From the NCBI GenBank assembly GCA_051294905.1, contig CM119377.1, forward strand, positions 9,796,001 through 9,860,000: 64,000 nt of DNA, written 5' to 3'. This document shows, one piece after another, positions 12,364 to 62,973 of the stretch (positions are counted from its first letter, which is position 1; each line of letters starts with the position of its first letter). This DNA is from Botryllus schlosseri (lineage: Eukaryota). A model generated the notes under the pieces. The model worked only from the letters and a program-made list of their open reading frames with translations, was not told the DNA's origin and made no database searches. The position numbers and the translations under genes were made by a program.

Positions 12364-12479
12364 ATGAAGTCTTTAATGTCATCAATCTTACTCGCGACAT
12401 GTGTCGCAATGCTTCTACACTCATTAACACAATGCGAAGCAAGGGTTCGCAGGACGAACATCCAAAGGTTTTATGGAAG
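12364..12479 (+). CDS. Secreted peptide precursor gene 1, exon 1 (signal peptide + RVRR)
   Basis: Reads MKSLMSSILLATCVAMLLHSLTQCEARVRRTNIQRFYG plus AG, followed by GTGAGT donor (phase 2). Hydrophobic core ends in C-E-A. The paralog at 59769 differs by 8/116 nt with no indels. Confidence 0.88.
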
Positions 12480-12777
12480 GTGAGTACTGGGTATACCAGA
12501 GATGTTCACACTTATGTTTGTAAATAAAATAGTCCTGAAACTGCTGATAATAACTATCGCCATACCGGTGACACTACGCAATGTAGCTCGTCAGAGATGG
12601 ATATGCGGTATAGACTTCTTACAGACGTGTGAGGCAAACTATATTCTAATCACTTCATTATACATTACATGAAGTCATGTTGAAGCTATCTTATTTCGAT
12701 CAATATGTTTATATGTAAATCATCACTTGATTTCATTACTGCATACTGTATATAATGTGTTCATTTTCTTATTTTAG

Positions 12778-12902
12778 CTTTGCAAACTCAGTGGTTCGCA
12801 ATTGCCGACCTCTCATGCGAGCGTCGTGCCACAGAGTTATTTACAAATGCAAAATCGGCGTTTTCCGACGAAAAAGAAACATTAACTCGGGATATGGTCG
12901 AG
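12778..12902 (+). CDS. Secreted peptide precursor gene 1, exon 2 (cationic Cys core + RRKR)
   Basis: ttttcttattttag acceptor and GTGAGA donor. Reads (S)FANSVVRNCRPLMRASCHRVIYKCKIGVFRRKRNINSGYGR, phase 2 to phase 1, in frame with exon 1. The paralog differs by 11/125 nt with no indels. Confidence 0.88.
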
Positions 12903-14809
12903 GTGAGATTAAAATCGACTTTTGTGACTTAACTGAAAGAAGCTTTAAGCGTAACCTACCGTATAGAGAATATAGCGCACATTTTAACGTTTTAATGTAA
13001 TGTTTCTACAATTTCAAAGGTTGGGCTGTGGTCAATAGAAGAAATGTCAAAAGAAGGAGACGAATCCATGCCAATTGCCTCACGTGCAGAAGCTGCATGT
13101 GAACACTGAATAACTCATCTACCATCGTATATTTTCATTTAAACCGGAAATATACGTGAATAATATTCACTGAATTTACACGAGAAGCAGAGGACTACTA
13201 TACGCAGACCTGAAACGATTGACTTCTGAGGAAATCTTAAGTCGGTCAATGAATTCCATTTGGTCGAAGTCATGAAGACGGAAGCAATGGAAACCCCCTG
13301 TCCTTACAACTTATTCGATTGGGATCCTAATTTGGACGGCTGTTCGCAAATGATGACAACCAAGCTACTGCAGTAACGTGACGTAGGAGCTGTTCGCCAC
13401 TTATAACATATATATATATATGTCCAGCTTGCAAAAGGCAGATATAGGATTGATTCGAAGTTATCGAAAGCCCAAGCTGACCATACCCGTGGAGCTATAA
13501 AGTCTGCTCCCTGACTTATACGGATTCAAGTGATCGCGAAAATAGTATATGGAAAGATGCATCCAAAAATAGAATGTCGAGAGACTTGTTAAATCTTAAA
13601 GATAGATGATAAATTCCTCTTTACCTATCCAACCGGACACTGTGACCATGAGTGTGGTGTTTAACACTCCTCTCTTATTTATTGTTCTTCAAATTGCATG
13701 TTTGATATTTGTCGATGTTCATATACAGTGTTACTACTCTCGGGGATTGCGATTCACGCGTATCGATAAGATGGCACCAGTTGTAATTGAAATATATGGC
13801 AATATTTATAAAGTAAGTGCGTGATTGTTTTTTACTAGGCCGTATAAAATCGTGACTATTTGAAATGTACCCAGATGTGATGAAATGTAAAAGTGGTGTG
13901 GGATGACAAGATTCCACGAAGGTAATATTCTCGAATATAGATTAGCATTCCAAGGTCGAATTTAAGAAAACGATCGCGAAAAATACGTGATAGTATTTTA
14001 GTTTTCCAGTATGAATTAGAGTTGATAAGGAAGATTTTTGTTGTTGTGACTCAGCAAAATTCAGAGGCTGCCCGAAAGCTTCCAGATCAGCCTAACCGTT
14101 CACCATGCAGGTTATGAAACGTTAAGAACGATTGCCCAATCCATCTTGAAAATTACATGGTATTTCTAATGTCGTAATGTTTCATTTTGAAGTACAACAG
14201 AATAGAGTAACATGTATTTAGATTGCGACTTGTGTGTTAATTGATTCTCGAGTTACTACCGAGATAGCTCAGACTTATTCAGTCGGTACAGTTTTCACTT
14301 GGTTGTTTTCTGCAACATCAATACTATACTGGACATATGTGGGCAAGTTCCTCAAGAAGTCGAGTGCTGGCCTTGAAAATTTAAATAAAAGGCAAGTACA
14401 CTGAATTATAAGTAATAGACGATATCATATCGGAACAAGTGAGGAAAATGAAGGTTCAAGTGTCGATGGGCGAGGTCGATATGCTAAAGATCTTGATCCG
14501 GCAATATCAAGCTTTGATTGTTATGTATATGTTTTTGTTATGGGGTATTTTTTATATACTCTGCTTGTTGACGAAGCAATAAAATCTCTCTCTCTCTCTG
14601 ACTAATTATTCAGCAACAGAATCCAGCAATTCCTAAACCTTGCAACCTTGCTCATCCTTATTCCGATTAGCATTGCTACGGATCCGGTGTATTATGTAGA
14701 TTAGGGTACACCATAGTGCTGAGTAACCGTTAGAAGGGTGTACCATTCCGGAAAAGGTTGAAAAGCACTGGTTTCAATTATAAAATGGGTGTGGTAATCA
14801 TAGTAGTCT

Positions 14810-22597: not shown

Positions 22598-24593
22598 TGT
22601 GTTATTTGACTTGTTTTAGGGGGAGGGGTCATCGCTGTTCTGTTTGGTCTTTTGGGGGAAAATTATTCCCGCATTACGTAATTTTATTGCTCTGTACCGG
22701 GAAAATGCCGTTAAATGGCAAAGTAACGAATTTGACATCTCTGCAGGAACTAGGTTATACAACAGAACCTTTCGAGTATCTCATACCCTACTAATTCAAC
22801 AAAAATTATAAATGAAACTTTTTACTGCAACTTTTGTGAAAATTGAATGAAACTTTTTCGCGATTTTAGTGCAACAAACACTTGCCCTACTAATATTACA
22901 AGATAGCAGATCTCATCAACGCAACTAAGGATACGTATTGAGGTGACTCATATACAATGGAAATGGACATATAAACTATCGACTGATTACATCTTCACAT
23001 CAGCACGAACAACCCACCACAACGAAACGGATTGACACGTCAGTAAAGCTATGACGCTTCACTGTCTAAAAGGCGCAACGATGGCTCAATATAGAACCGC
23101 AAAGAAGGCATTCTCGTGCCTGGAATCTCAGATAAATGTACACACGGATGTAAACCGGGGCCATTCGGAGATAGGCAAGGCATAGGAAGCGATATTATTG
23201 ATCCGAGCGAACTCCATAGGCTACGACTAAGAACGCAATGGGGATTCTATTCGTGCCGTCAAAATATGCAATTGTTCTGCTGGTGGTCGGGGTGGTGGTA
23301 TTGGACTGCGCGTCAGTTAACGCCATAATTGGAATTAAATTTCGAAAAGGATTCAGAATGATGAACGGGTACGTATCTTACAGCGAAAAAAATGCTTCCA
23401 AATAATCAAGTTTGGCCGGGCGGGGTTGTGGATGTAGATATTTCTATCAAGAAAGATCTATTTTACATACTTGTAAAAATGTTCCGCGGGCATTGTGTGA
23501 TGTAGGCCCTATTGCATATCTGGGATCACGGCGGTCGGTGGTAAATATGTGGTTGCCGACATGTCACTTGATTTAATGGTTAGAACGTTTTCCGATGCTT
23601 TTTATTCTTGAGAATATTATTATGTTCTTTATGTACAGTAAAACTGGTAAATACCCACATAATCCGGGAGGCAACCTGCCTCCAATACACGAAGAAGTTA
23701 GATCACAGAATTGCAATAGATGGAGAATTGGCAAGGGTTGCAGAAGTAAAGATGATTGAAAATGAAGAATCGAAATTACATAAATTATGTTGTGATATTC
23801 CAGTAGAAGTGTAGCTTAGTCCAGTGGCGCATTCAAGGTCTTTTGAAGGATCACCTATAAAGTGATTTTCTGGATCATGTCGAGTCGAACGATTCCCGGA
23901 ATTTCGTGGATAGGTCTCATGAGTTCATGTTTAATGCTCGTAACAGCAGATGCATCGAGCATCATTACATCGTCATGATCACGCCAGATGCACTCAGTTA
24001 TGTGTATTTAGTGTTAGGATAAAGTCACAAGTCATATCTAGTCACTGCAAACTCGAGTCAAATCGATTAATATTTTCTCAAAATTTTCGTCTCAAATTTC
24101 GAATCATCAAATATTTTCAGCTTATGCCGTTTTATTTCAATGTGCGGATGCAGATGCATAATTGCATCAAGGCTAGCGCTAGACCACGCCGAATCAGTCA
24201 AACTTGGTATCGTGCAATTTCTATACTACTAAAACGACATGAGTTTCCGCTGTCATTTATGTAAATTGATGAGAGGCTGCCCGCAGGACATGTTCCGTTC
24301 AATATAGTATGGGAGTATACCAACGTGTAAGTTATGTTTATTAATTGAAATGCTGCATGAGTGCTATAAAGGCAGCACCGATTGAAATAGGTGTGAAAGC
24401 GAAATCTGTTAGCGGAAAGTGCCGATGGCCTGATAGCAACCTGTATATAGTAGCTCATATATATGTTATGGCGAAAATCTGGTAAATACACCTATCTCCT
24501 ATGCATGAATTTGCATTGCAAAATACGAAGTTGGTCATGGTGAGCTAATCAGATTAGTAAACATAGACTAAGTTTGGGCTATGTAATTAGCAG

Positions 24594-24730
24594 GATCTTC
24601 AACCAGCTCGTGACAAATTGTGTTCCTATCGTTCGGGATATCTGCAGTAGGATGATGCGCAGATGCATGCATAGTACGTGGCGTGGCAAGAGGAGTATTT
24701 TGGATGCTGATATCACGATCGACTTACAAC
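24594..24730 (+). CDS. Divergent third paralog, exon 2 equivalent (gene or pseudogene; other exons unresolved)
   Basis: ttagcag acceptor and GTGAGT donor, 137 nt, phase 2 to phase 1 as in genes 1 and 2. Reads IFNQLVTNCVPIVRDICSRMMRRCMHSTWRGKRSILDADITIDLQ, with the same N..V.NC.P..R..C.R....C.....RxKR.I pattern. Confidence 0.72.
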
Positions 24731-26601
24731 GTGAGTTTATTACCGATAACATTAGAAATGTATCAGTCGATTTTAGTAGGCACAGTAGATTTCCTTATCA
24801 AATTACGTTTCGTGCTGATGGAATCGCATCATTGTAAATTTTATGTCTAGTAAACACAGCTTTACACGTTATCCTCACCGGCAGACAGTGGTGACGCTAA
24901 TGGATTTATCAGACTCTTTAGACCTGGTGTGAAAAGCAATAGTGGCCGAACACCATAAATTACAATACTAACAACAACAGCTTGACACGAGCCCTTGTAT
25001 ATATTTTGGAAATTTACCGGAGTAGACTTATCGCATTCAAAAAAAAATCACGTGCTGACAAGAAAAAAGAATAGTCAGTAATTTAAACATCATTAACGTA
25101 AGTAGTTGTACATATATTGTCTGTCACCTTTTACCTAAAGCCCACTCAAATTTTCACATGCGAGACTCCTATTCCAAAATGTTCATGCTGCATTACTTAA
25201 CCTCAGGTGTTTATTGAAATGATTTGAGAGGATCGTCACAAGGATTTCGGAAACTGTAATATTAAGAGTCACTCAAGCTATAATCTATCATTCTAATAAA
25301 CACAAAACATTGACAGCGCATGGGTCATTATGATTGTCTTTGAGTGAAATGTCTTATTGTCTGCGAGCGACACAAACAATTCTTCTGCCAATACGCCGAA
25401 TTCTTTGATAATAATGAAGTTAGAAATTTACACATTAGCCTCAAGAGTTGGATACAGCTATTTTATTCAGCGCTAAACACTCCTCAAACGAATATGAAAC
25501 TCGACTTGCGACGAAAGAAACTCTGAACCTTACATGAGGTTGTTACTTTTCATTAGGGACCGGGATTCGAGTAAAGCGATCAGAGCGCAGGAGGCGACTT
25601 CGACCGAGCTGCAATAGCTGTTTTCGGTGTTTGGCCTAACGCATCAGGTATTGCGCAAGTCTATATGCGGAAATGATGAAGTGCATGCTGTGGATCCAGC
25701 AACATAAAGATCTCACATCGCCCCCGGAAAGAGCACTGTGTCAACCGGTCGACTATTATTTATCAAGAGCGGAGTTCGTAAATTTAAGTGGTGCACGGTC
25801 ATTTCGAAACTTATTATTTGGACTGTGACGACGACCAGACAATGGACCAATCAGGACGACAGATACCGTATTGTTTATTCCAGAAAAATATTTAGGGTGT
25901 CTGAGATACAATTGTGTTACGACGAAATTCAATTTCGTTGAATTCCAGGAAACACTTTAAACATCTTGACTGTGTGAACACTGAACAGCCATGAGCATTG
26001 TAACGTAGTCTGTGTGATCACGTCACAACGAATCACAGTGCTGCTAGAAAAAATGGCGCCTTCCGCCAAAATCTTCATTATCCCAACGCTCTTCCCAAAT
26101 ATTCATCCTGACTACACCTATGTGTGCGTGAAGCATTGTTTATGTCAAAAATTTGGGGATTTAGCTCCGTTTCATTTGATATTCAGCTGTTTATATTCAT
26201 ACGCAGGCCTCTATTATATGTTCATGTAATTGGACGTTTGTACGAGTTCTTAGTGACTGTCCTGGCGATGTTGGTGTGGATTACCTTAATTTCATGCAAC
26301 AGAGATCAATTTTGACGCAGATGGCTGTAAAATACATCTTCGATTATACTATGAACAGACAATGAAAGATGTCACTCTTCAGTTGTGCTGTTTTTCGTTT
26401 TCATCCATTTTCAATGGCACAGGGCAGGGGTGGGCAACATACGGCCCGCGGGCCGGATCCGGCCCACAAAGGGATTTTGTCCGGCCCGCGGACAGTTTTC
26501 CGTCTTACGTGATAATGTGGCCCGCGGCCCCAGTCTTCCGAGATTCCCCACTACTTGCTTACATACATCAAATTTTAGTGACTGTATGTTATTATACACA
26601 T

Positions 26602-27234
26602 CAGTGGTGGCTTTTGGGTGGGCGAGGTGGACGGTCACCCGGGCCCCCCCTGGTCGAAGGGTCATCCTAATTGATCAATCATCAAATCTCTGCATTTGTT
26701 AGAAAGTCCCATATCCCGATAATCATCAAGTCTCTGCATGCGGTACTTAGTCTTAAAGGTACTTATCCACGCAATAATACAGCGCTTGGCTCAAACCTTG
26801 ACGTAGTGTGCTGGCTCATTGATAATGCCAGTCGATAGCTTTCCAGATCAGTGTGGGCCTAACTAGCCTGCAGCAGTTGTATCGCTATTCTTTTATTTCA
26901 CGCTGAATGCCACATAACTTCAACACGAAGGCATGAGCTATAAATTATAGTTAACTGGTTCACTTGTTTTATAATTTGACAATGTATGATAAAAGAAGGC
27001 CCAGCAGGAGCTAGAGCAACTCAACATTCCGGCCTCCTTCAAAGCCGTATTATTATAGTGTGGTATGCACATCACGGCCTAATCCCGTTACATATGGAGC
27101 ATTAATACTACGTTAGTAACAATAGATGCGAAGGGGGGTCTGGTGGCGGAGCCCCCAGGAGCTGAGGTTACATACTTATAGCCCCCCCCCCCCCGGAAGT
27201 CTGGCCCAGGGCCCCCAATTGTAGGCCACCACCG
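26602..27234. mobile_element. Nested CAGTGGTGGC MITE (inverted relative to 19279-19681)
   Basis: TIRs present. TSD ATACACAT/ATACACTT (7/8). Confidence 0.8.
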
Positions 27235-27369
27235 ATACACTTGTATGCGCACTGCGCAGCGAGCGAGGGTGAAGGCTACGTGTACGTTCGTCGAAGCAAG
27301 AAGACCTGCATTATCGGCATTTACGATGTACTCAACCCTAATGTCATTTGTGGAAATCATGGTGTTTGT

Positions 27370-27475
27370 CGCCTACAATGGTCATTTACACCAGGCCGAT
27401 ATTTCTTATTTTTGATACCGTAACCGTCGACTTGTAGCACGACACACTTCTAGGCTTTTGTAAGACACCGCTTAT
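27370..27475 (-). mobile_element. SINE body fragment (same family as 22370-22597)
   Basis: Direct sequence similarity to 22365-22465. Confidence 0.6.
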
Positions 27476-29103
27476 GCCAGGGGTCGCCAGCTCAAAACGG
27501 ATCGCGGGTCACTTTTAAATTTCGAGGCCGCTGGCCGCATGAATTCAATAGGCCACACAGTTGAACAACCACGCTATTTCGTAACCTACTAAACCCTATA
27601 CAATGAATTGATAATGTATCGATTCAGCAATCCGGCCCGCCAAATATTTAATTTTCCTCTATCCGGCCCGCCGACTGGAGAAGTTGCCCGCCCCTGGCAC
27701 ACGGCGTATCAATTCAATTTCAACAACCATTGACACATCTGTGTCCGATTGCCGGATATCAAAATATCTGTATATAATTTCCAAGAAAATGTTTTTCATG
27801 CACAATCGAGCATTGCATTTGCCTCAATCGCAAATAATCTAGAGTTTCTAGACAGTCATTGCGATTCGCCTGGTTTCATAAACCTGTTTCAGTGTTTGAT
27901 ATTTAAAAATACAAAAGTGTTTCATGTTTTATAACGAAGATGTTGGCAATCACAGCGGTAAAAACCGAGATTGACAGCAGCAGAGCAAAGAATATAAAGC
28001 AAAGTATATATAAAAACACACAATTAGTATTTGTGTAATCTCGGGTAAGTTTACCGCAATATTGCCACTATGAGAACATTCCTGAAATACAGATTATCAT
28101 TGCGATTGCCACAGTGAGGAATATATCCTAAACATCGTGCCTTCATGCAGAATAATGAATAATATTGAAGGCATTGATTATGTTGGTGTGTGAGATGAAA
28201 GAGAGAATCGCCATCAATATGCCGTTGACATGCGGCGTCTTGTATGTAGTTTCTACGCTTAAACCTTTCTGCTTTGACAGTTTTCGAGAAATATGATTAT
28301 TTATTTGATAACATTCGATGAAAACGAAAGCGATTTCGAAGCGATCAATTATAGAAATAAGGGCTTTTGATTTTAACGAGTCTCCGATCGGAATGCCTAC
28401 AATGTTATAATTAAACGGTGAGCGCGATTTTAGATCCTGTTTACAATTGCTACCTATATATATCCGCGTCATTGGCGACGATACCTAAATTTCGTTTGAT
28501 GACGCGGCAAGACAAAATATCATATGATAAAAATCACTAAATCATGTGTTCTATGGGCTTCGATCAAGCGCACACGTTATCACCAAATTGCATATTTGCA
28601 AGACTTCGGTCACGTGATTGGTTACGCATAGGAACAGACGACTGGTTTAACAAGCTACTCGCTCGCTCATGCGTCTTTATGGCCAATTTCTCATTTTAAA
28701 CCTTCGTTTTAAAGTTGTAAAGGTATCAAAATATTGCTGCGATTGTAATTTGAGAGCTGGCTATATGTTCGGTTCGTGGGTCTTCTCCGGTAGTGGTTCT
28801 TATACTGTTATCGTCAAAAACACTCTGATTTACTTGGTGTTATATTGTCGTATTCTGGCATGTATAACATTACCACCATGGTCTTGTGTTCAGGTACCTG
28901 CTCATTTTATTGCTGCGTAAGTAGCAGTATAGATTAATTATAGAGTTAGTGTTCTTGTATATTCTGCTTGAAAATTATCGATATCTAGCGATTTTTTTTC
29001 TTGTAATATAAAATATTTAAACGGGGACACGATTTGGATGTGCTTTACATGGATGAACCCTGGATAAATGTTCCGTCTCGTCTATAGCGTGCATTGGTGA
29101 CAC

Positions 29104-34177: not shown

Positions 34178-35861
34178 CAGGGCCGTAACTGCCGCACTCC
34201 AATCCGCCAATTGGAGGGGGCGAGCTCAAAGGGGGGCCAAGTTTTTTCGTGAATTAACACAAATTATAGAGTATTTTCGAATATTTATAAAACTTTTTTC
34301 AAATTTGCTCTTCTTGTCGCTTGCTGTTATAATATTAATATGGGTGGTAGGATGAGAGGCTGGGAGGCTGGAAGATTGACATTTCAGCGTCGATGATTAC
34401 CGCGTCACGACCAATGTTCCCTCTAAGCTGCCCGCACTACAGACACATTCTGCACGCACAGAAAATCTGTGCCGCGCACAAAAAACCCACCCGTGGTTCG
34501 ACAAATAATTATCACTATGTGTTTCGCAAAGGCACTAAAGCTCATCTGACTAAACTTACGACCATTTTAGATGTACAAATGTAGGCTGCATCACTAATGT
34601 ATAATCAGTAATTCGCAATCATACGAAGCGACGCCATCTTGGTAGAAACGTCGATTTCAAGCCGAGTGCTCTGAGAAGCATCATCTCCTCTCTCCATCGG
34701 ACGAGCAAGTTCACGTCCCTATTTTCTGAATTATATTGTATTGCACCCATGAGCGTCGCATTCCCGTGTTAAAAATGATTCGTGAGTGATTTTCGTGTTA
34801 GTCTTTTCAATCGGAGTTCGAAATTGGACTGTGAGTTATTGCGTATGCCTGCGAATTGCAATATTGCTGCGCAGAATAGTTACTCAACAGGGCCTTGCAA
34901 GCGTTGATCGTGAAATGCTGCAATTGCGCAGTGTGCATTGTAGCTCGGCGTTGAATTACATCAGCTTCACAGCAGCAAAATTCTGATTTTATTCGATTCG
35001 TTTGAACATGAATTTTCTGTACTACAATTAACTTAGTCGCCTGTGGGCAGACAGGTAACATTTGCATCAATATCAAATTTCAACTAATTGCGCATTTCGC
35101 AGAAATTGGTCATTCGCTCATATAGTTCTTGCTTCAGTCACACTTGAATAATTGTTGCCGAACGTTCTGACACACTCATTGAAGTCGCATGTTACATAGG
35201 CTTACCATATTTTGAAAATGCAAAAAGAGGACACTTTTTCAGAAATTTGCAAGATACAAAACCGGAGTAGAATTCCCAAAAACCGGTGAATTTTTCCCAC
35301 TTTGCGGTGGGTTGACTAAAAAAAAAAAAAAAAGGTCTTCATCTCGCTCAGAGCTGAAATCACCGCTTTTCCTCCGAAATACCCGCCGGAGCTTCACTTC
35401 TGCGCTATTTTGCGGCATATCACTCGCAATTTCCTCTATATCTGACCTAAATTTTCAAAAAAGAGGACAAAATCTCAAAAAAGAGGACAAAAGGGCGTCC
35501 TCCGAGGACACTTTCAAAAAAGTCAAAAAAGAGGACAAATCCTCTTAAAAGAGGACGTATGGTAAGCCTAATGTTACATGGCATAAAACTCTATATGTCT
35601 TGGTGCGTCGTGGCGAGGTAATGGCCAACGCCGATATGTCCATTTCTATAAATCTTGCGTATTTTTTCTTGGGGAAGGAGCACCCAATAATTGAGATATT
35701 TACAACTTGAAATCGCGCCGGGCGCGAAATAGTTTTTTTTAAATGCCTAAATTTTCAAAAAATACTATATAATTTATGCTAATTCACGAAATAATTTTGG
35801 GTCCTCTTCGAGCTCGCCCCCCCCCAATTGGAGGGTTAGGGGTGCTTCAGTTACGGCCCTG
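34178..35861. mobile_element. CAGGGCCGTAAC-TIR element (hAT-like), TSD not matching
   Basis: Inverted ends cagggccgtaac/gttacggccctg with the subterminal gagctcgccccc motif. Further right-end copies end at 37041 and 62973. Confidence 0.6.
35197..35570. mobile_element. hAT-type MITE (TAGGCTTACCATA TIR; AAGAGGACA repeats)
   Basis: Perfect 13-bp TIR and perfect 8-bp TSD ATGTTACA. Confidence 0.92.
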
Positions 35862-37495
35862 CCCTAATCCTAACCCTGCAACCTGATTCGGAAGAAAGTA
35901 TCCGTCTTACTTCTATTTTCATCATAGCATACTGTTGTGGGTAATTTTATTTCGCAATGAAATTTATGAAGTCAATGCATCGCTCAAATTTGACGGACCA
36001 ACACTTGAAGAAAATCCCCGTACTGCCTCGAGGACCTACCAGCCTAACTCCTCACACCTTGCTGCCCAGTTGGAGACTCACAGTATAATAATAACACCAC
36101 CACTACAGTCAATATTTGATAACCTGCCCTTCATTGTGATTTGTGAATGAGTACTTTCGTATTTTTGATATTTTTGCGCTGCGGCTCTTTTAAAACTACT
36201 CTTTTTGTTAGATCGGCTCGGGCATGAAACAGGTCTGGCCACTCAGTGACGTGCGGTGAGGTTCATGGCTGGTGAGGCACGGACACCCCCCCCCACACAC
36301 ACACACACAAACACGCACCCACGTAAAGTAGGGGAGATGTGGTACCGATGGATCACTGGGACCGAAAATACTTTGAAAATTCTTTATGATAATTCCGTGA
36401 TTACACTCCGTGAACTTGTCTACAATTGCTTGCTGGCAAAATCTTTCCTCACATACAAAAAAATTCGACGTGCGCGAGCTATGGGGTCTCTCACAGATGT
36501 TTTTTGTTTTGGGGGGTGTAAAGTAAATTTATATCGACATATACATTTTTCTTTGTAACCTCCAACACGAACAAACCAGCAATCATTTTTATTGTGAAGT
36601 GTAGAGCTTGTATCAGGCCATATAATGGCACCTATTATTTTTTTCAGTACTTTCCTTGAGTGGAATTTTTTTCGATTCATGTATAAAATTCGTAGGGTGT
36701 GGACCGATGATACAATAGCCAAATCAAGCAAAATAATCAAGCATACTAATCATAAAACAAATGAAACATGCCTACGTACAGAAAATATTTATGTAATAAT
36801 TGCATATGACGATATGCCCATTTCTATAAATCTTGCGTATTTTTTCTTGGGGAAAGAGCGCCCATTAATTGAGATATTTGACAACTTGAAATCGCGCCTA
36901 GCGCGAATTTTTTTTTAAAAAATGCCTAAATTTTCAAAAAATACTATATAATTTATGCTAATTCACGAAATAATTTGGGGTCCCCTTCGAGCTCGCCCCC
37001 CCCCCAATTGGAGGGTTTGGGGTGAGACAGTTACGGCCCTGCCCTAATCCTAACCCTGCAACCTGATTCGGAAGAAAGTATCCGTCTTACTTCTATTTTC
37101 ATCATAGCATACTGTTGTGGGTAATTTTATTTCGCGATGAAATTTATGAAGTCAATGCATCGCTCAAATTTGACGGACCAACACTTGAAGAAAAGCCCGT
37201 ACTGCCTCGAGGACCTACCAGCCCAAATCCTCACACCTCGCCGCCCAGTTGAAGACTCGAAGTATAATAATAACACCACCACCACAGTCACTATTTGATA
37301 GCCTGCCCTTCATTGTGATTTGTGAATGAGTTCATTCGTATTTTTGGTTTTTTTGTGCTGCGGCTATTTCAAAACTACTCTTTTTGTTAGATCGGCTCGG
37401 GCATGAAACAGGCCTGGCCACTACTCAGTGACGTGCTGGTGAGGCACGGACACCCCCCCCCCCACACACACACAAACACACACCCACGTAAAGTA
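35630..37495 (+). repeat. Young direct duplication of ~700 bp (35630-36328 and 36810-37495)
   Basis: Near-identical stretches with a period of about 1180 bp. Confidence 0.9.
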
Positions 37496-47699: not shown

Positions 47700-48075
47700 A
47701 ATCTAATTTTAATCTAATTCTAATTCTAATCTAATTTGGAAAAAAAACCTGTGTAGCTCCAATTCTAATTCTAATTCTAATCTAATTTGGAAAAAACCTG
47801 TGTAGCTCTAATTTTAATTCTAATTCTAATCTAATTTGGAAAAAGCCTGCGTAGCTCTAATTCTAATTCTAATTCTAATCTAATTTGGAAAAAACCTGTG
47901 TAGCTCTAATTCTAATTCTAATTCTAATTCTAATCTAATTTGGTAAAAGCTGTGTAGCTCTAATTCTAATTCTAATCTAATCTGGAAAAACTTGTGTAGC
48001 TTTAATTCTAATTCTAATCTAATTTGGAAAAAACTGTATAGCTCTGATTCTAATCCTAATCTAATTCGGAAAAGC
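47700..48075. repeat. Minisatellite, about 8 copies of a 42-56 bp unit
   Basis: Unit (ctaatt)n-ctaatctaatttggaaaaaacctgtgtagct. Confidence 0.95.
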
Positions 48076-49379
48076 TGGAAATTTTCTAGCTGTCCAAGTT
48101 TGTGTGGCGCATCATTATCAGTTTAGAAAAATATCCGTCGTTGAAGTTATTATCCGGTTTATAGGAACGGATTTAACCATAAGCAAAACTGTGGTGTGGT
48201 TACACTTGCGCACGCTGGATGTGCTACTTGGAAATCCGCCAATCTGTAAAAAGAGTGTTACTGAACAACAAACAGTCGATTCCCGCGTTAACTGTTGTTT
48301 TTTGTTGATTTTGCTTTAGAATGTACTTGATATTTTCCCCGAGTTTCGAAAAATATCATATGACTTGCATAAAAATACAGCTAAAAATATGTAGCTAGCA
48401 AACGGTTTCCGACTACAGTCGCTAAGGTAAAACGTCGCATGCCCAACTGCCGTTTTTCTTTGTGGTGGCTGATCCTTTTCTCTCATCCTTGTCCGTATAC
48501 GTATGAGTAGGCTATTCCATTGGTAAGCGTATAGGACAGTGGTTTTCAACCTTTTTGTGTGCGCAGACCACTTTTGGACCGTCACGGACCCCCGTTGATC
48601 TCCCAAAGTTTTAGTTCACATAGAACTGAATTGTCGTGCAGCCGTAATCTGTCTGGTGCAAATATTAACCATAGGTTAGTGATAAACAGCAACGAAATGT
48701 ATTCTTCTGAAAATTACATCATACTATTTATGTAAAAATTGGGTAGACTTTTATTAGTTTAAAGCGAATTCTGTAGCTGCATTGAAATACGTGATCATGT
48801 CTTGAAAATCCACGCCATCGATTTGATATGCACGAGTGTGGAAAATAAAATGATATAGGTGGCGGGACATGTAATGATGACACGGAACGTTTCCGACGAC
48901 ACCTTTGGGTAAGATCGCAACAGCTATGGCACCAAAATTGAGAAACAGATTTATAATAAACATATAACGTCCAGGCTACATTCATTTCTATATAGCAGCT
49001 CATCTTGAAGTTATTCTGGAATAGTGGTTCTGTATAATTGCTGATACGAAACTTGTCATCTCAATGAGTTCGCGGTCTATTCGATGAAATGCGGATTTCA
49101 GAATTGATCTTCTTCGGTAGGTATTGCTTCTCGCTAGAAAATGTTGACGGTATCGCTGACAGTTATTTTTCGTTGTGTCCCATGACCTGCGATGGTATAC
49201 CAAGTCCGACTTCTTTACGGATATAAATACTTAATTCGCAACGGCATGGTATGACCGCGTCCTGAGTTACCTCCTGATCTGACAGCAAAACGACGCTTAC
49301 AGTTGCCTCAAATTAGGTATTGATTAAATGGATATAGAGTTGAATAGTGGAAGAGTCCCATATCGGTAAGAATAGAGGT

Positions 49380-59768: not shown

Positions 59769-59884
59769 ATGAAGTCTTTAATGTCATCAATCCTACTCGT
59801 GACATGTATCGCAATGCTCCTACACTCATTAACACATTGCGAAGCAAGGGTTCGTAGGACGAACATCCGAAGGTTTTCTGGAAG
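59769..59884 (+). CDS. Secreted peptide precursor gene 2, exon 1
   Basis: MKSLMSSILLVTCIAMLLHSLTHCEARVRRTNIRRFSG plus AG, followed by GTGAGT donor. Confidence 0.88.
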
Positions 59885-60183
59885 GTGAGTACTGAGTATA
59901 CCAGAAATGTTCACAATTATGTTTGTGAATAAAATAGTCCAGAAAGGGCTGATAATATACCTATCCCCATACCGGTAACACCACGCAATGTCGCTCCTCG
60001 CCTCTCGGAGACGTATATGCGGTATACACTTCGGTGTAAGGCCAACTTTATTCTAATCACCTCATTATACATTACATGAAGTCATGTTAAAGCTGTCTTA
60101 TCTCGATCCATATTTTATATGTAACGCCTCGCTTGATGTCATTACTGCATACTGTATATAATATGTTCAATTTCCTACTTCAG

Positions 60184-60308
60184 CTTTGCAAACTCTGTCG
60201 TTCGCAATTGCCGACCTATCATGCGAGCGCTGTGCCACAGAGTTATTTACAAATGCAAAATCGGCGTTTTCAGGCGAAAAAGAAGCATAAACACGGGATA
60301 TGGTCAAG
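60184..60308 (+). CDS. Secreted peptide precursor gene 2, exon 2
   Basis: ttcctacttcag acceptor and GTGAGA donor. Reads (S)FANSVVRNCRPIMRALCHRVIYKCKIGVFRRKRSINTGYGQ. Confidence 0.88.
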
Positions 60309-61627
60309 GTGAGATTAGATTGGACTTATGTGGCTTAACTATAAAACCTTTATGCGTAACATGCCGTATAGTAAATATACAGCACATTTTTATGTTTTAA
60401 TATAATGTTTCTCTAATTTCCAAGGTTGGGCTGTAGTCAATAGAAGAAATGTCAAAAGGAGAAGACGGATTCATGCTAATTGCCACACGTGCAGAAGCTG
60501 CATGTGAACGCTGAAGAACTCATCTAACATCGTAAATTTTCATATAAACCGGAAATATACGTGAATATATATGAGAAGCAGAGGGACTACTGCGCAGGCC
60601 TGAAACGATTGACTTTGAGGAAGTCTTAAGACGGTCAATGGATTCCATTTTGGTTGAAGTTATGATGACTGCTGCGATGGAAACCGCCTGTCCTTACAAC
60701 TTATTCGATTGAGATCATAATTTGGATGGGTCTTCGGAAATGATGACAACCAACCTACTGCAGTGACGTGACGGAGGAGTCACTCGCCAGTTATAACAAA
60801 TATCTATCTATCTGTCCACCTTCCTAAAGGGGTTTATCGTAAGCCCAAGCTAACCATACCCGTGGAGCAATGAAGTCTGCTCCCTGACTTATATGGATTC
60901 AAATGATCTTGGAAATAGTATATGCAAAGACGGCTGTAGAAATAGAATGCATGGAGTGACTTGTTAAATCTTAATGATAGATGATAAATTCCTCTTTACG
61001 TATCGGACACTGTGACCATGAATGTGGTGTTTAACATTCCTTTCAGATAATTTTATTTATTGTTCTTCAAATTGCATGTTTCATATTTTTCAATGTTCAT
61101 AAACTATATTACTATTCTCGACTTGATTACGATTTACGCGTATCGATTGGCACAATTTGTAATTCAAATATATGGCAATATTTATAAAGGAACTACGTGA
61201 TTGTTTCGGATTGCAGGCTGTATAAAGCCATGACTATCTGACACGTGTCCAGATGGGATGAGACGTAAAAGTGGTGTGGGATCACAAGATGCATGAAATG
61301 GTAATATTCTCGTACATAGATTAGCATTCCAAGGTCGAACTTTGGAAAACGTGCGTGAAAAATATTCGTGATGATATTTTAGTTTTCCAGTATGGATAAC
61401 TGTTGATAAGGTGTCAAGCGACCGTAGCTATATACAGTTTAGGCCAGTCCTCTTAAACCCGATGTACCGTACACTCCAAGGCAGCGGTTGATTAGCGGGG
61501 ATTCCCGAGTCAGTGTCAGGGTACCACTGGAGATTGAGACATACTCACCTTATACATATGATTCATGATAACACCGCTGTCTTGGTCATCATTGTCTGTA
61601 GCAACTAAGGCGCGTTCGGTAGTCGAG

Positions 61628-61700: not shown

Positions 61701-62749
61701 TTCACATTCTATATATTTCCAATAATTATCAGCTATCTTCCGTCATCACGCTGTCTCGCATTTCACACTGGTCTCTCAAAGGGAATAGCAGACGTTACAC
61801 CGAGTTGGAATAAATATTAATTTATACTGTTTTCGTTTTGTGTAAAAATCATATTTTAATATTTTTATTCCTGTAACACTTTGTTCATATACACTGCACA
61901 GTTCGTTTTGCGCTCCAATATTATATTACAAAAGTATTCTAGTGTGCAGTTAGGTGTGTAATGAGGTAGATTTTTGTTTTTGCGACTCAGGAAAATTCTA
62001 GGGTTTCCTGAAGGCTTCCAGATTAGCGAAACCGGGACCGAAACAGCACTTCATCACCTCCCCCAAATAAAACTTTAGTATATGGCTATGGCCCCCATAG
62101 TCTTGGGCACCAAGACCCCATAGCAGGTTAGAGTTTTCACCGCTGCTTGTGAGTAACATTTAATATTCTCATTACTGAGTCCATTTATTCCAAGTTTTCT
62201 ATAATTCAATAATATCGAAAATGGCATATATTGCTATAAAACTTTTTATTCTCTCTCTGCTCACGTAATCAGATTTACCTGTACAGCTGAGTGCGGTGTT
62301 GTCTTAAAAATGTCGGGCTCGTAAATAACAATTAACTATATTCGGGCGGGCCCGTTGTTAAAATGACTTCGTTACACGATGTTATTTCGTGGCCTCTTGT
62401 CTGCTTAAATCGCCCAAACGTACTAAACTAAAAGACGCACACGACTTCAAGTTGATCTTTTTTCACTGACAAATAATTTTTCTCTGCTGGGTGGCATTAG
62501 CCTTTTGGGGATCAGATTGGCAGAACAAGAACATTCGGCACCAGCCATTTAGGCGCTTATGGACATGGACAATTGAACGTATATGTATATATAATGAAGT
62601 TTTCGGTCAGTATAAGAGCAGTCCTTGCCGGTCAAGGTTTTCTCGCTGCTGATCGTTCTGGCCTATACTCCTCGGACTCTTCTCGAACTTTTACGCATGT
62701 TACATGGCCTAACACTTCATATGCTTCGGTTACGGCCGGCGCCGAAACG

Positions 62750-62973
62750 CCTATTTCTATAAATAATGCTTATTTTGTCTCGGGGGAAGGGTACCCCAAA
62801 ATCAAGATTTTTGGCAGCATGAAATCGCGCGTGGCGCGAAAAAACATTGAATGAAGTTGCATAAGTTTTGAAAATAATACTCCATAATTTCTGTTAATTC
62901 ACAAATGATTTTGGGCCCCCTTTGAGCTAGCCCCCTCAATTTGAAGGCTTGGGTTGCGTCAGTTACGGTCCTG
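62750..62973. mobile_element. Right-end fragment of the CAGGGCCGTAAC family in intron 2 of gene 2
   Basis: Matches 35640-35861 (gaaatcgcgc...aattcac...gagct.gccccc...cagttacgg.cctg). Confidence 0.7.

What the first reader, a model, noticed from the sequence alone, without database searches (positions are those of the whole stretch)
24594..24730. Third, highly divergent paralog hidden between the two duplicated blocks
Seen: the exon IFNQLVTNCVPIVRDICSRMMRRCMHSTW-RGKR-SILDADITIDLQ aligns without gaps to FANSVVRNCRPLMRASCHRVIYKCKIGVF-RRKR-NI. It keeps N, V, NC, P, R, C, R, C, RxKR and I, the C-x7-C-x6-C spacing, and the phase-2/phase-1 boundaries, without obvious DNA similarity in the flanks. 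Inference: the family is older than the A/B duplication, and the Cys scaffold plus convertase site are the selected features while surface residues diversify, as in immune effector families.
Basis: partly seen in the sequence, partly recalled or inferred. Interest (0 to 1): 0.78.

Follow-up and report, generated by a model that had tools for sequence, protein, structure and literature searches.

The report
Intact third cysteine-peptide precursor gene
The flagged stretch is the middle exon of a complete small three-exon gene, one of at least eight related genes in this genome for secreted, positively charged, cysteine-bearing peptide precursors with no known relatives; no RNA from this copy was seen and its function is untested.

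Summary
Window 24594-24730 is an open exon with AG and GTGAGT borders, preceded by a phase-2 intron and followed by a phase-1 intron. It aligns without gaps to exon 2 of genes A and B (E 6e-6 and 3e-7 within the window; 0 of 5000 shuffles reach the score).

It is not a lone exon. A signal-peptide exon (23238-23368) and a terminal exon (25557-25639) complete a 116-residue precursor.

The genome holds at least eight such three-exon genes. Seven lie within 137 kb of this contig and one on another contig. All share the intron positions, C-x7-C-x6-C, a [FW]-R-[GR]-K-R-[SN]-[IL/N] site, a second multibasic site and a C-terminal C-x2-C-x2-C. Two contigs whose DNA does not match this genome carry relatives. 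Pfam, PDB, the ESM Atlas search and papers gave nothing.

Gene C has two close copies just beyond the window. Their coding length is identical, their introns vary by hundreds of bases, and dN/dS is 0.3-0.4.

Four bulk RNA runs showed no reads on C, so expression is unproven.

Best reading (inferred): a secreted precursor cut by furin-type convertases into two disulfide-linked cationic chains.

This scan had already noted the cluster (s1-253984). I find more genes, outside relatives and a different last exon.

The parts
23238..23368 (+). Gene C exon 1: ATG, signal peptide (hydrophobic core of about 13 residues, then D-C-A-S) and a basic N-extension; donor CGG|gtacgt; the intron that follows is phase 2
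   Evidence: this is the only ATG-started hydrophobic ORF upstream with a phase-2 donor. It is conserved with the same length (131 nt) and the same donor in paralogs C3 and C2.
23369..24593 (+). Intron 1 of gene C (1225 nt, GT...AG)
   Evidence: Intron 1 is 1263 nt in C3 and 854 nt in C2, while the exon lengths are identical.
24594..24730 (+). Gene C exon 2 (the finding): C-x7-C-x6-C domain, S-T-W-R-G-K-R-S-I site and the start of the spacer
24731..25556 (+). Intron 2 of gene C (826 nt, gtgagt...attag, phase 1)
25557..25639 (+). Gene C exon 3: R-V-K-R and R-R-R-R sites, then L-R-P-S-C-N-S-C-F-R-C-L-A and the stop codon TAA
   Evidence: about 90% conserved in C3 and C2; aligns to exon 3 of all 8 genes, with R, C, C, C invariant.
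22893..28486 (+). Duplicated block that carries gene C; copies C3 and C2 lie beyond the right edge of the window
   Evidence: 83-87% DNA identity to the C3 block and 70-80% to the C2 block.
26422..27694 (.). Insertion of a dispersed repeat into the C block, absent from C3 and C2; not part of the gene
   Evidence: thousands of first-look candidates genome-wide. It accounts for most of the partial RNA reads.
12364..13102 (+). Gene A: exons 12364-12479, 12778-12902 and 13020-13102 (107 aa)
59769..60507 (+). Gene B: exons 59769-59884, 60184-60308 and 60425-60507 (107 aa)

Best explanation
Window 24594-24730 is exon 2 of an intact three-exon gene (gene C: 23238-23368, 24594-24730, 25557-25639; 116 codons). 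It belongs to a family of at least eight genes for small secreted precursors. SHOWN: the exon-intron structure, the intron phases, the cysteine pattern and the basic sites are shared by all eight genes and by relatives on two foreign contigs. Coding length is preserved among the close copies and dN/dS is below 1. INFERRED mechanism: (1) The signal peptide is removed, probably after D-C-A-S. (2) The six cysteines (three in exon 2, three at the C-terminus) pair in the ER. (3) Furin-type convertases cut after R-G-K-R (P1' Ser, P2' Ile) and after R-V-K-R / R-R-R-R, releasing a mildly acidic spacer. (4) This leaves an N-chain of about 48 residues (net charge about +8, helix-prone) joined by disulfides to a 13-residue C-chain. 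The layout resembles the B chain, C-peptide and A chain of insulin but is unrelated in sequence. (5) The near-invariant Gly before K-R suggests that the N-chain ends as Arg-amide. The product would act outside the cell as a defence peptide or a signalling peptide; I cannot tell which. My confidence is about 0.9 for the gene and family part and about 0.4-0.45 for the two-chain processing.
For: Gene and family: searches find 8 clear exon-2 copies in the genome (profile E 4e-17 to 7e-23) plus one weaker copy; all have AG exactly one base plus 8 codons before Cys1 and a phase-1 GT donor; every locus has a downstream exon ending R-x4-C-x2-C-x2-C-x(1-3)-stop, preceded by a multibasic site; every locus has a signal-peptide exon with a phase-2 donor, giving precursors of 98-125 aa. 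Constraint: dN/dS is 0.21 (A-B), 0.39 (C-C3), 0.31 (C-C2) and 0.42 (C2-C3), Fisher p 3e-4 to 0.013. The CDS is 351 nt in all three C-type copies, while their introns differ by up to 570 nt. Other sources: the exon-2 profile found 3 hits among 1.84 billion proteins. Contigs L023 and L024 carry exon 2 and exon 3 with the same acceptor position and have no DNA match in this genome. Two-chain reading: each half carries exactly three cysteines in all 8 genes, so separated chains would each have an unpaired Cys. Both multibasic sites are present in every gene. Variable sites among C/C3/C2 concentrate in the spacer and the N-extension (16 of 38), not in the Cys segments (6 of 46; p 0.005). Amidation: Gly at P3 is kept in six of the eight genes here (not in A or B), in the weaker copy G and in the three foreign genes, although furin leaves that position free. 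AlphaFold2 models the exon-2 domain as one helix, residues 2-38, at low confidence. On such a helix the three Cys fall within an 80-degree arc.
Against: No RNA reads lie on exons 2 or 3 of C in four bulk RNA-seq runs, each sampled at 6-13%. No indexed RNA run holds the exon or gene A. No spliced transcript-derived protein of the family appeared in the 1.84-billion-protein search. On the C lineage alone there are 6 synonymous and 8 non-synonymous changes (omega about 0.4 by my arithmetic on those counts), too few to show constraint on this copy by itself. No canonical AATAAA or ATTAAA lies within 960 nt after the stop. Cleavage, disulfide pairing and amidation are all inferred from sequence. 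The complex prediction gave no answer, the fold model has pLDDT 57, and helical amphipathicity is only mildly above shuffles (p 0.1-0.2 for most genes).
Confidence: 0.6

Rival explanations
1. Gene C is a silent or recently dead copy. It is a structurally intact duplicate that is no longer expressed, and its open frame persists only because the duplication is young.
For: Zero RNA depth over 23400-26399 in four runs. The only reads near exon 1 fit paralog C3 better (28 of 30 in the loose end, plus the 23237 A>T difference). Changes specific to the C lineage are 6 synonymous and 8 non-synonymous, not significantly constrained. A repeat has inserted 780 nt downstream of the stop.
Against: All three exons are open and all four splice sites are canonical. 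There are no indels in 351 nt, although the introns of the same block gained or lost hundreds of bases. dN/dS against both C2 and C3 is 0.31-0.39, p 0.001-0.01. C has the shortest terminal branch of the trio. RNA sampling was shallow and covered unknown tissues.
Confidence: 0.2
2. The precursor yields separate single-chain products rather than a two-chain molecule. The active product would be an amidated N-terminal peptide (a neuropeptide or hormone). The C-terminal Cys peptide would be an independent product, or the odd cysteines would make homodimers.
For: The G-K-R motif is the classical amidation and dibasic signal of neuropeptide precursors and is conserved across species. Absence from bulk RNA-seq would fit a rare secretory cell type. 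Homodimeric, single-disulfide ascidian peptides exist (dicynthaurin and halocidin; from my own knowledge, not tested here).
Against: The strict 3+3 cysteine count in every member, and the joint conservation of both Cys segments while the spacer varies, are more simply explained by pairing between the segments.
Confidence: 0.2
3. The similarity is chance and the exon is not coding.
For: The region is short (35 aligned residues) and no transcript was seen.
Against: E 3e-7 within the window and 0 of 5000 shuffles reaching the score. Intron positions and phases are identical in 8 loci. Matching first and last exons exist. Two copies are 82-89% identical.
Confidence: 0.01

Closest known systems
Insulin/relaxin-type two-chain prohormones (B chain, C-peptide, A chain)
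   Same: A small secreted precursor with a signal peptide. Two conserved cysteine-bearing segments are separated by a fast-evolving connecting peptide that is flanked by basic convertase sites. The predicted product is two chains held by disulfides.
   Different: The cysteine framework is 3+3 (C-x7-C-x6-C ... C-x2-C-x2-C), not 2+4 (C-x11-C ... CC-x3-C-x8-C). There is no sequence similarity: Pfam and PDB searches of the exon peptides found nothing. The chains are strongly cationic. The two-chain state is inferred, not shown.
Hepcidin/LEAP-type and other convertase-released cysteine antimicrobial peptides
   Same: Signal peptide, pro-region, an R-x-K/R-R site directly before a short cationic C-terminal Cys peptide, and lineage-specific tandem gene expansion.
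   Different: Hepcidin has 8 Cys and LEAP-2 has 4, all within one chain after the site (from my own knowledge). Here only 3 Cys follow the last site and 3 more lie before the first site. No homology was detected.
Ascidian helical antimicrobial peptide precursors (styelins, clavanins, botryllin; PMC9966394 for botryllin)
   Same: Ascidian secreted pre-propeptides with a cationic, helix-prone mature part. Several are C-terminally amidated through a Gly plus basic signal (from my own knowledge).
   Different: Those peptides are cysteine-free and have an anionic C-terminal pro-piece. This family has six conserved cysteines and stays cationic throughout (net +5 to +9 after the first site). No sequence similarity was found.
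Amidated neuropeptide precursors (x-G-K-R processing)
   Same: A conserved W/F-R-G-K-R-S motif, where Gly is kept although furin does not require it. A small secreted precursor that bulk RNA-seq did not detect.
   Different: It is not a multi-copy peptide precursor. The predicted peptide is long (43-49 residues) and disulfide-bearing. No receptor or neural expression is known.

Membership tests
The 3+3-Cys precursor family defined here by genes A and B | Exon 2 acceptor lies one base plus 8 codons before Cys1 (phase-2 intron) and a phase-1 GT donor follows the basic site | tested here: met
   identical in C and in all 8 loci, and the acceptor is at the same place in foreign contigs L023 and L024.
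The 3+3-Cys precursor family defined here by genes A and B | C-x7-C-x6-C followed, four residues later, by [FW]-R-[GR]-K-R-[SN]-[IL] (Asn in place of Ile/Leu in A and B) | tested here: met
   C9, C17, C24, R30, K32 and R33 are invariant in the 8-sequence alignment. Profile E for C is 6.6e-23.
The 3+3-Cys precursor family defined here by genes A and B | Terminal exon with a multibasic site and R-x4-C-x2-C-x2-C-x(1-3)-stop | tested here: met
   present at 25557-25639.
The 3+3-Cys precursor family defined here by genes A and B | First exon encodes a signal peptide and ends in phase 2 | tested here: met
   23238-23368. The signal peptide is judged from its hydrophobic core and small residues at -3 and -1; no dedicated predictor was available.
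The 3+3-Cys precursor family defined here by genes A and B | Transcribed and spliced as predicted | tested here: inconclusive
   no reads on C in four subsampled bulk runs. Four reads over the start region fit paralog C3.
Insulin/relaxin superfamily | B-chain C-x11-C and A-chain CC-x3-C-x8-C framework, with a match to the family profile | tested here: not met
   The cysteine spacing differs. Pfam gives no hit for the exon peptides at E up to 10. The full spliced protein could not be submitted.
Hepcidin / LEAP-2 | All cysteines (8 or 4) lie in one C-terminal peptide after the furin site | tested here: not met
   Only 3 Cys follow the last basic site. No Pfam hit.
Furin/PC substrates (works-like claim only) | R-x-K/R-R followed by a small P1' residue and a hydrophobic P2' residue, in a secretory protein | tested here: met
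   R-G-K-R|S-I and R-V-K-R|S. Cleavage itself cannot be tested with these tools.
Peptidylglycine-amidated peptides (works-like claim only) | Gly immediately before the dibasic cleavage site | tested here: met
   W-R-G-K-R in C. Gly is kept in six of the eight genes here (not A or B), in the weaker copy G and in the three foreign genes. Amidation itself cannot be tested here.

The most novel reading that the evidence does not exclude
This would be an undescribed family of two-chain secreted peptides in sea squirts. A long cationic helix ending in Arg-amide would be laddered by three disulfides to a short C-x2-C-x2-C chain, after a connecting peptide is excised. That would be an independent invention of the insulin-like 'two chains from one precursor' design. 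The family would have an old, conserved single-copy member (E-type, with a counterpart in another species) and a recently expanded tandem cluster (A/B, C/C3/C2, D, F) serving hormone-like signalling or defence.
Probability: 0.3. Interest if true: 0.7.

Novelty: new variant of a known kind. Interest (0 to 1): 0.45.

Why it matters
If the products exist, this is a new family of processed cysteine peptides in the closest invertebrate relatives of vertebrates, and current protein databases hold no annotated member of it. Its precursor logic parallels insulin-type hormones without being related to them. The family offers a natural comparison between one member that has a counterpart in another species and a fast-duplicating cluster. 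That comparison bears on how peptide hormones and defence peptides arise and expand. In practical terms, the report gives gene models for eight genes for which the protein searches returned no spliced or named product.

Tried and rejected
1. The search for homologous proteins was run twice, with the stop-to-stop ORF around exon 2 of C and of E and scoring restricted to the exon. No candidate shared three words either time. Since P0003 carries the S-T-W-R-G-K-R-S motif and was still not returned, this blank says little.

2. Pfam on the four exon peptides, the PDB sequence profile search and the ESM Atlas search by features found nothing.

The 4-row alignment gave 133 pattern matches, none confirmed.

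4. Complex prediction with the exon-2 and exon-3 halves of gene D gave no verdict (score 0.02, pLDDT about 42). This is neither support nor evidence against.

5. AlphaFold2 on the exon-2 domain gave pLDDT 57, too low for a fold search.

6. Paper searches for the motif TWRGKRS, for ascidian cysteine-rich peptide precursors and for the three sample accessions gave nothing relevant.

7. Exon 1 and exon 3 of A did not find their C counterparts by tblastn. They were found instead through conservation among C, C3 and C2.

8. My first exon-1 donor for gene E gave a stop at the junction. It was replaced by the donor AGG|gtcagt 21 nt upstream.

9. I did not submit the spliced 116-residue protein to any tool, because it has no reference and I did not want to type a long sequence. 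Whole-protein Pfam, fold and annotation look-ups are therefore missing.

10. I did not verify the species. Earlier notes of this scan call it a colonial sea squirt.

Full report
OBSERVATION. Window 24594-24730 (+) is preceded by ...tagcag and followed by gtgagt. After one carried base it reads 45 codons without a stop, from I-F-N-Q-L-V-T-N-C to D-L-Q, and one base is carried into the next exon. They have the same layout: AG, one base, 8 codons, then the first Cys, and a GT donor in phase 1. The ungapped alignment has 13 of 35 identities to A and 15 of 35 to B. Within the window tblastn gives E 5.8e-6 and 3.4e-7, against 0.03 or worse for every other hit. None of 5000 shuffles reaches the observed score of 72 (mean 19.9, sd 4.0, maximum 42). 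DNA similarity between the C region and blocks A/B is absent apart from repeat fragments, and exon 2 itself is only 46-48% identical.

IT IS A WHOLE GENE. The block around the exon (22893-28486) has two further copies on the same contig, 55 and 70 kb to the right and outside the window. I call them C3 and C2. They share 83-87% and 70-80% DNA identity with the C block. Comparing the three copies exposed two more conserved open pieces.
- A terminal exon at 25557-25639, with acceptor ...tcattag. It encodes R-V-K-R, S-E-R-R-R-R, then L-R-P-S-C-N-S-C-F-R-C-L-A and a stop.
- A first exon at 23238-23368. It has an ATG, a hydrophobic core of about 13 residues, D-C-A-S, a basic stretch and the donor CGG|gtacgt in phase 2.
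Joined, the three exons give 351 nt, or 116 codons.
Gene A resolves in the same way: 12364-12479, 12778-12902 and 13020-13102, 107 codons, ending N-C-L-T-C-R-S-C-M-stop. Gene B is 59769-59884, 60184-60308 and 60425-60507. The terminal exon is therefore homologous between A/B and C, with a multibasic site followed by C-x2-C-x2-C at the very C-terminus.

THE FAMILY. Searching the whole assembly (495.5 Mb; the window is contig 7, 9796001-9860000) with the exon peptides and with their profile gives eight clear exon-2 copies (profile E 4e-17 to 7e-23).
- On contig 7 these are F (minus strand, 9.782 Mb), A, C, B, C3, C2 and D (9.919 Mb).
- E lies on contig 14.
- A weaker ninth copy, G, lies at 16.09 Mb of contig 7 with spacing C-x7-C-x8-C. 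I found no first or last exon for it.
All eight clear copies have the acceptor at the same codon position, a phase-1 donor, a signal-peptide exon ending in phase 2 and a terminal exon ending R-x4-C-x2-C-x2-C-x(1-3)-stop. The precursors are 98-125 residues long. The invariant exon-2 columns are the three Cys and R, K, R of the basic site. The mature parts carry exactly 3+3 cysteines.

OUTSIDE THIS GENOME. The exon-2 profile, run against 1.84 billion representative proteins, found three hits and no annotated protein.
- P0001 is an A/B-like read-through ORF from a Logan contig.
- P0002 comes from an ENA metagenome contig (L023). It carries exon 2 and an exon 3 that ends L-N-C-A-T-C-K-K-C-M-S, close to gene E.
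- P0003 comes from a Logan contig (L024). That contig carries two genes in tandem, one of the S-T-W-R-G-K-R-S type and one of the G type.
L023 and L024 have no DNA match in this genome, so they probably come from other species, which I could not identify. In a tree of the mature parts, C/C3/C2 (support 96/93) and A/B (98/98) are separate clades on long branches, D joins the C clade (90/90), and E pairs with the L023 gene (85/89). The family therefore predates the A/B duplication and at least one speciation. Pfam, the PDB sequence search, the ESM Atlas search, two word-index protein searches, JGI metagenomes and the paper library gave nothing.

HOW THE CLUSTER AROSE. The gene order is F, A, C, B, C3, C2, D. 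A-B and C-C3 have similar divergence: dS is 0.23 and 0.21, and flank identity is about 83-86%. C2 is more distant from both C and C3 in its flanks. This fits a tandem duplication of a unit that held both A and C, giving B and C3 next to an older C2. It is an inference, because the sequence between the genes is not alignable. So C is not a relic stranded between two blocks. It is probably part of the duplicated unit.

IS COPY C ALIVE? Evidence for:
- All three exons are open and all splice sites are canonical.
- The CDS is 351 nt in C, C3 and C2, while their introns are 1225/1263/854 and 826/668/1238 nt.
- dN/dS is 0.39 (C-C3) and 0.31 (C-C2), Fisher p 0.011 and 0.0009.
- C has the shortest terminal branch of the trio.
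Evidence against or missing:
- Four bulk RNA-seq runs of the same species, each read at 6-13% (1.0-1.9 billion letters), put no read on 23400-26399.
- The four reads of run X7 over 23222-23399 carry a loose end and a base difference that fit copy C3 (28 of 30). So a C-type paralog is weakly transcribed there, but C itself was not seen.
- The other reads in the stretch fall on a dispersed repeat inserted at 26422-27694.
- No indexed RNA run holds the exon or gene A.
- The C lineage alone has 6 synonymous and 8 non-synonymous changes, too few to decide.
I rate a silent or dying copy at about 0.2.

MECHANISM (inferred from sequence).
- The first basic site is R-G-K-R followed by Ser-Ile. This fits the furin preference for R-x-K/R-R with a small P1' residue and a hydrophobic P2' residue (established knowledge).
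- T-W-R-G-K-R-S is invariant across C, D, E and the L023 gene.
- Every member has a second multibasic site 4-15 residues before the C-terminal Cys motif.
- Among C/C3/C2, variable positions are 9 of 20 in the spacer and 7 of 18 in the N-extension. They are only 4 of 29 in the Cys domain, 0 of 4 in R-G-K-R and 2 of 13 in the C-terminal peptide. Pooled, that is 16 of 38 against 6 of 46 (p 0.005).
- Two conserved Cys segments separated by a fast-evolving piece bounded by convertase sites is the logic of B chain, C-peptide and A chain precursors.
- Because each segment has three cysteines, separate chains would each keep an unpaired thiol. At least one inter-chain disulfide is therefore the simplest reading.
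- Gly at P3 is kept in six of the eight genes here (all but A and B), in the weaker copy G and in the three foreign genes, although furin does not need it. This points to amidation, with the N-chain ending W-R-NH2.
- The N-chains carry net +8 to +14. AlphaFold2 models the domain as one helix at pLDDT 57. On an ideal helix the three Cys lie within an 80-degree arc. Amphipathicity is only modestly above shuffles.
- Whether the product is a defence peptide or a signal is open. Cationic charge and tandem expansion favour defence. The amidation motif, gene E's counterpart in another species and absence from bulk RNA favour a signal.
- The complex prediction gave no verdict.

RELATION TO EARLIER NOTES OF THIS SCAN.
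- Note s1-253984 described the same cluster as three orphan genes with a three-Cys peptide and an acidic tail. My tests give at least eight genes, relatives on foreign contigs, and a different, conserved last exon that adds three more Cys and leaves no acidic tail.
- Note s1-254095 (odd Cys count, two-chain or dimer) agrees with my reading.
- Note s1-278698 describes a two-chain cationic peptide gene on another contig, conserved in three ascidian orders. I could not establish whether it is gene E.

VERDICT. The 'immune effector diversification' part is not supported. The family is new to the databases I could search, but it is a variant of a familiar kind, the convertase-processed secreted cysteine peptide precursor. 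Expression and activity are unshown. Interest 0.45.

Noticed in passing
window 26422-27694: A composite dispersed repeat is inserted in the C block and is absent from the C3 and C2 blocks. Its outer parts (1-180 and 814-1192 of the insert) recur together on many contigs at 85-94% identity, with thousands of first-look candidates. It looks like a short non-autonomous element that has itself been interrupted. Most partial RNA reads fall here.
   Followed up: partly
G000 contig 7, 16088009-16088122, minus strand (locus L022): A ninth exon-2-like copy (G) with spacing C-x7-C-x8-C and S-V-W-R-G-K-R-S, and the same acceptor position and donor phase. No signal-peptide exon or C-x2-C-x2-C exon lies within about 4.5 kb. 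Its counterpart on foreign contig L024 does have a terminal exon. In this genome it may be a relic or may have distant exons.
   Followed up: partly
L024:2018-2400 and L024:5040-5830: The foreign Logan contig carries two family genes in tandem, about 3 kb apart: one of the S-T-W-R-G-K-R-S type and one of the G type. In this genome those two types lie 6 Mb apart on contig 7.
   Followed up: partly
window 35619-37422: Tandem duplication with a period of about 1179 nt and 87-97% identity (repeat families D3, D6, D11 and D15). A third, 73% copy of one piece lies at 62730-62812.
   Followed up: no
window 47742-48076: Minisatellite with 49-nt and 42-nt units built on TAATTC repeats (families D8 and D14).
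   Followed up: no
   Followed up: yes
window 23222-23399, run X7: Four reads (two start points, first mate on the minus strand) cover the start-codon region of a C-type gene. They match paralog C3 better than C, which suggests weak transcription of C3 or an allele of it.
   Followed up: partly
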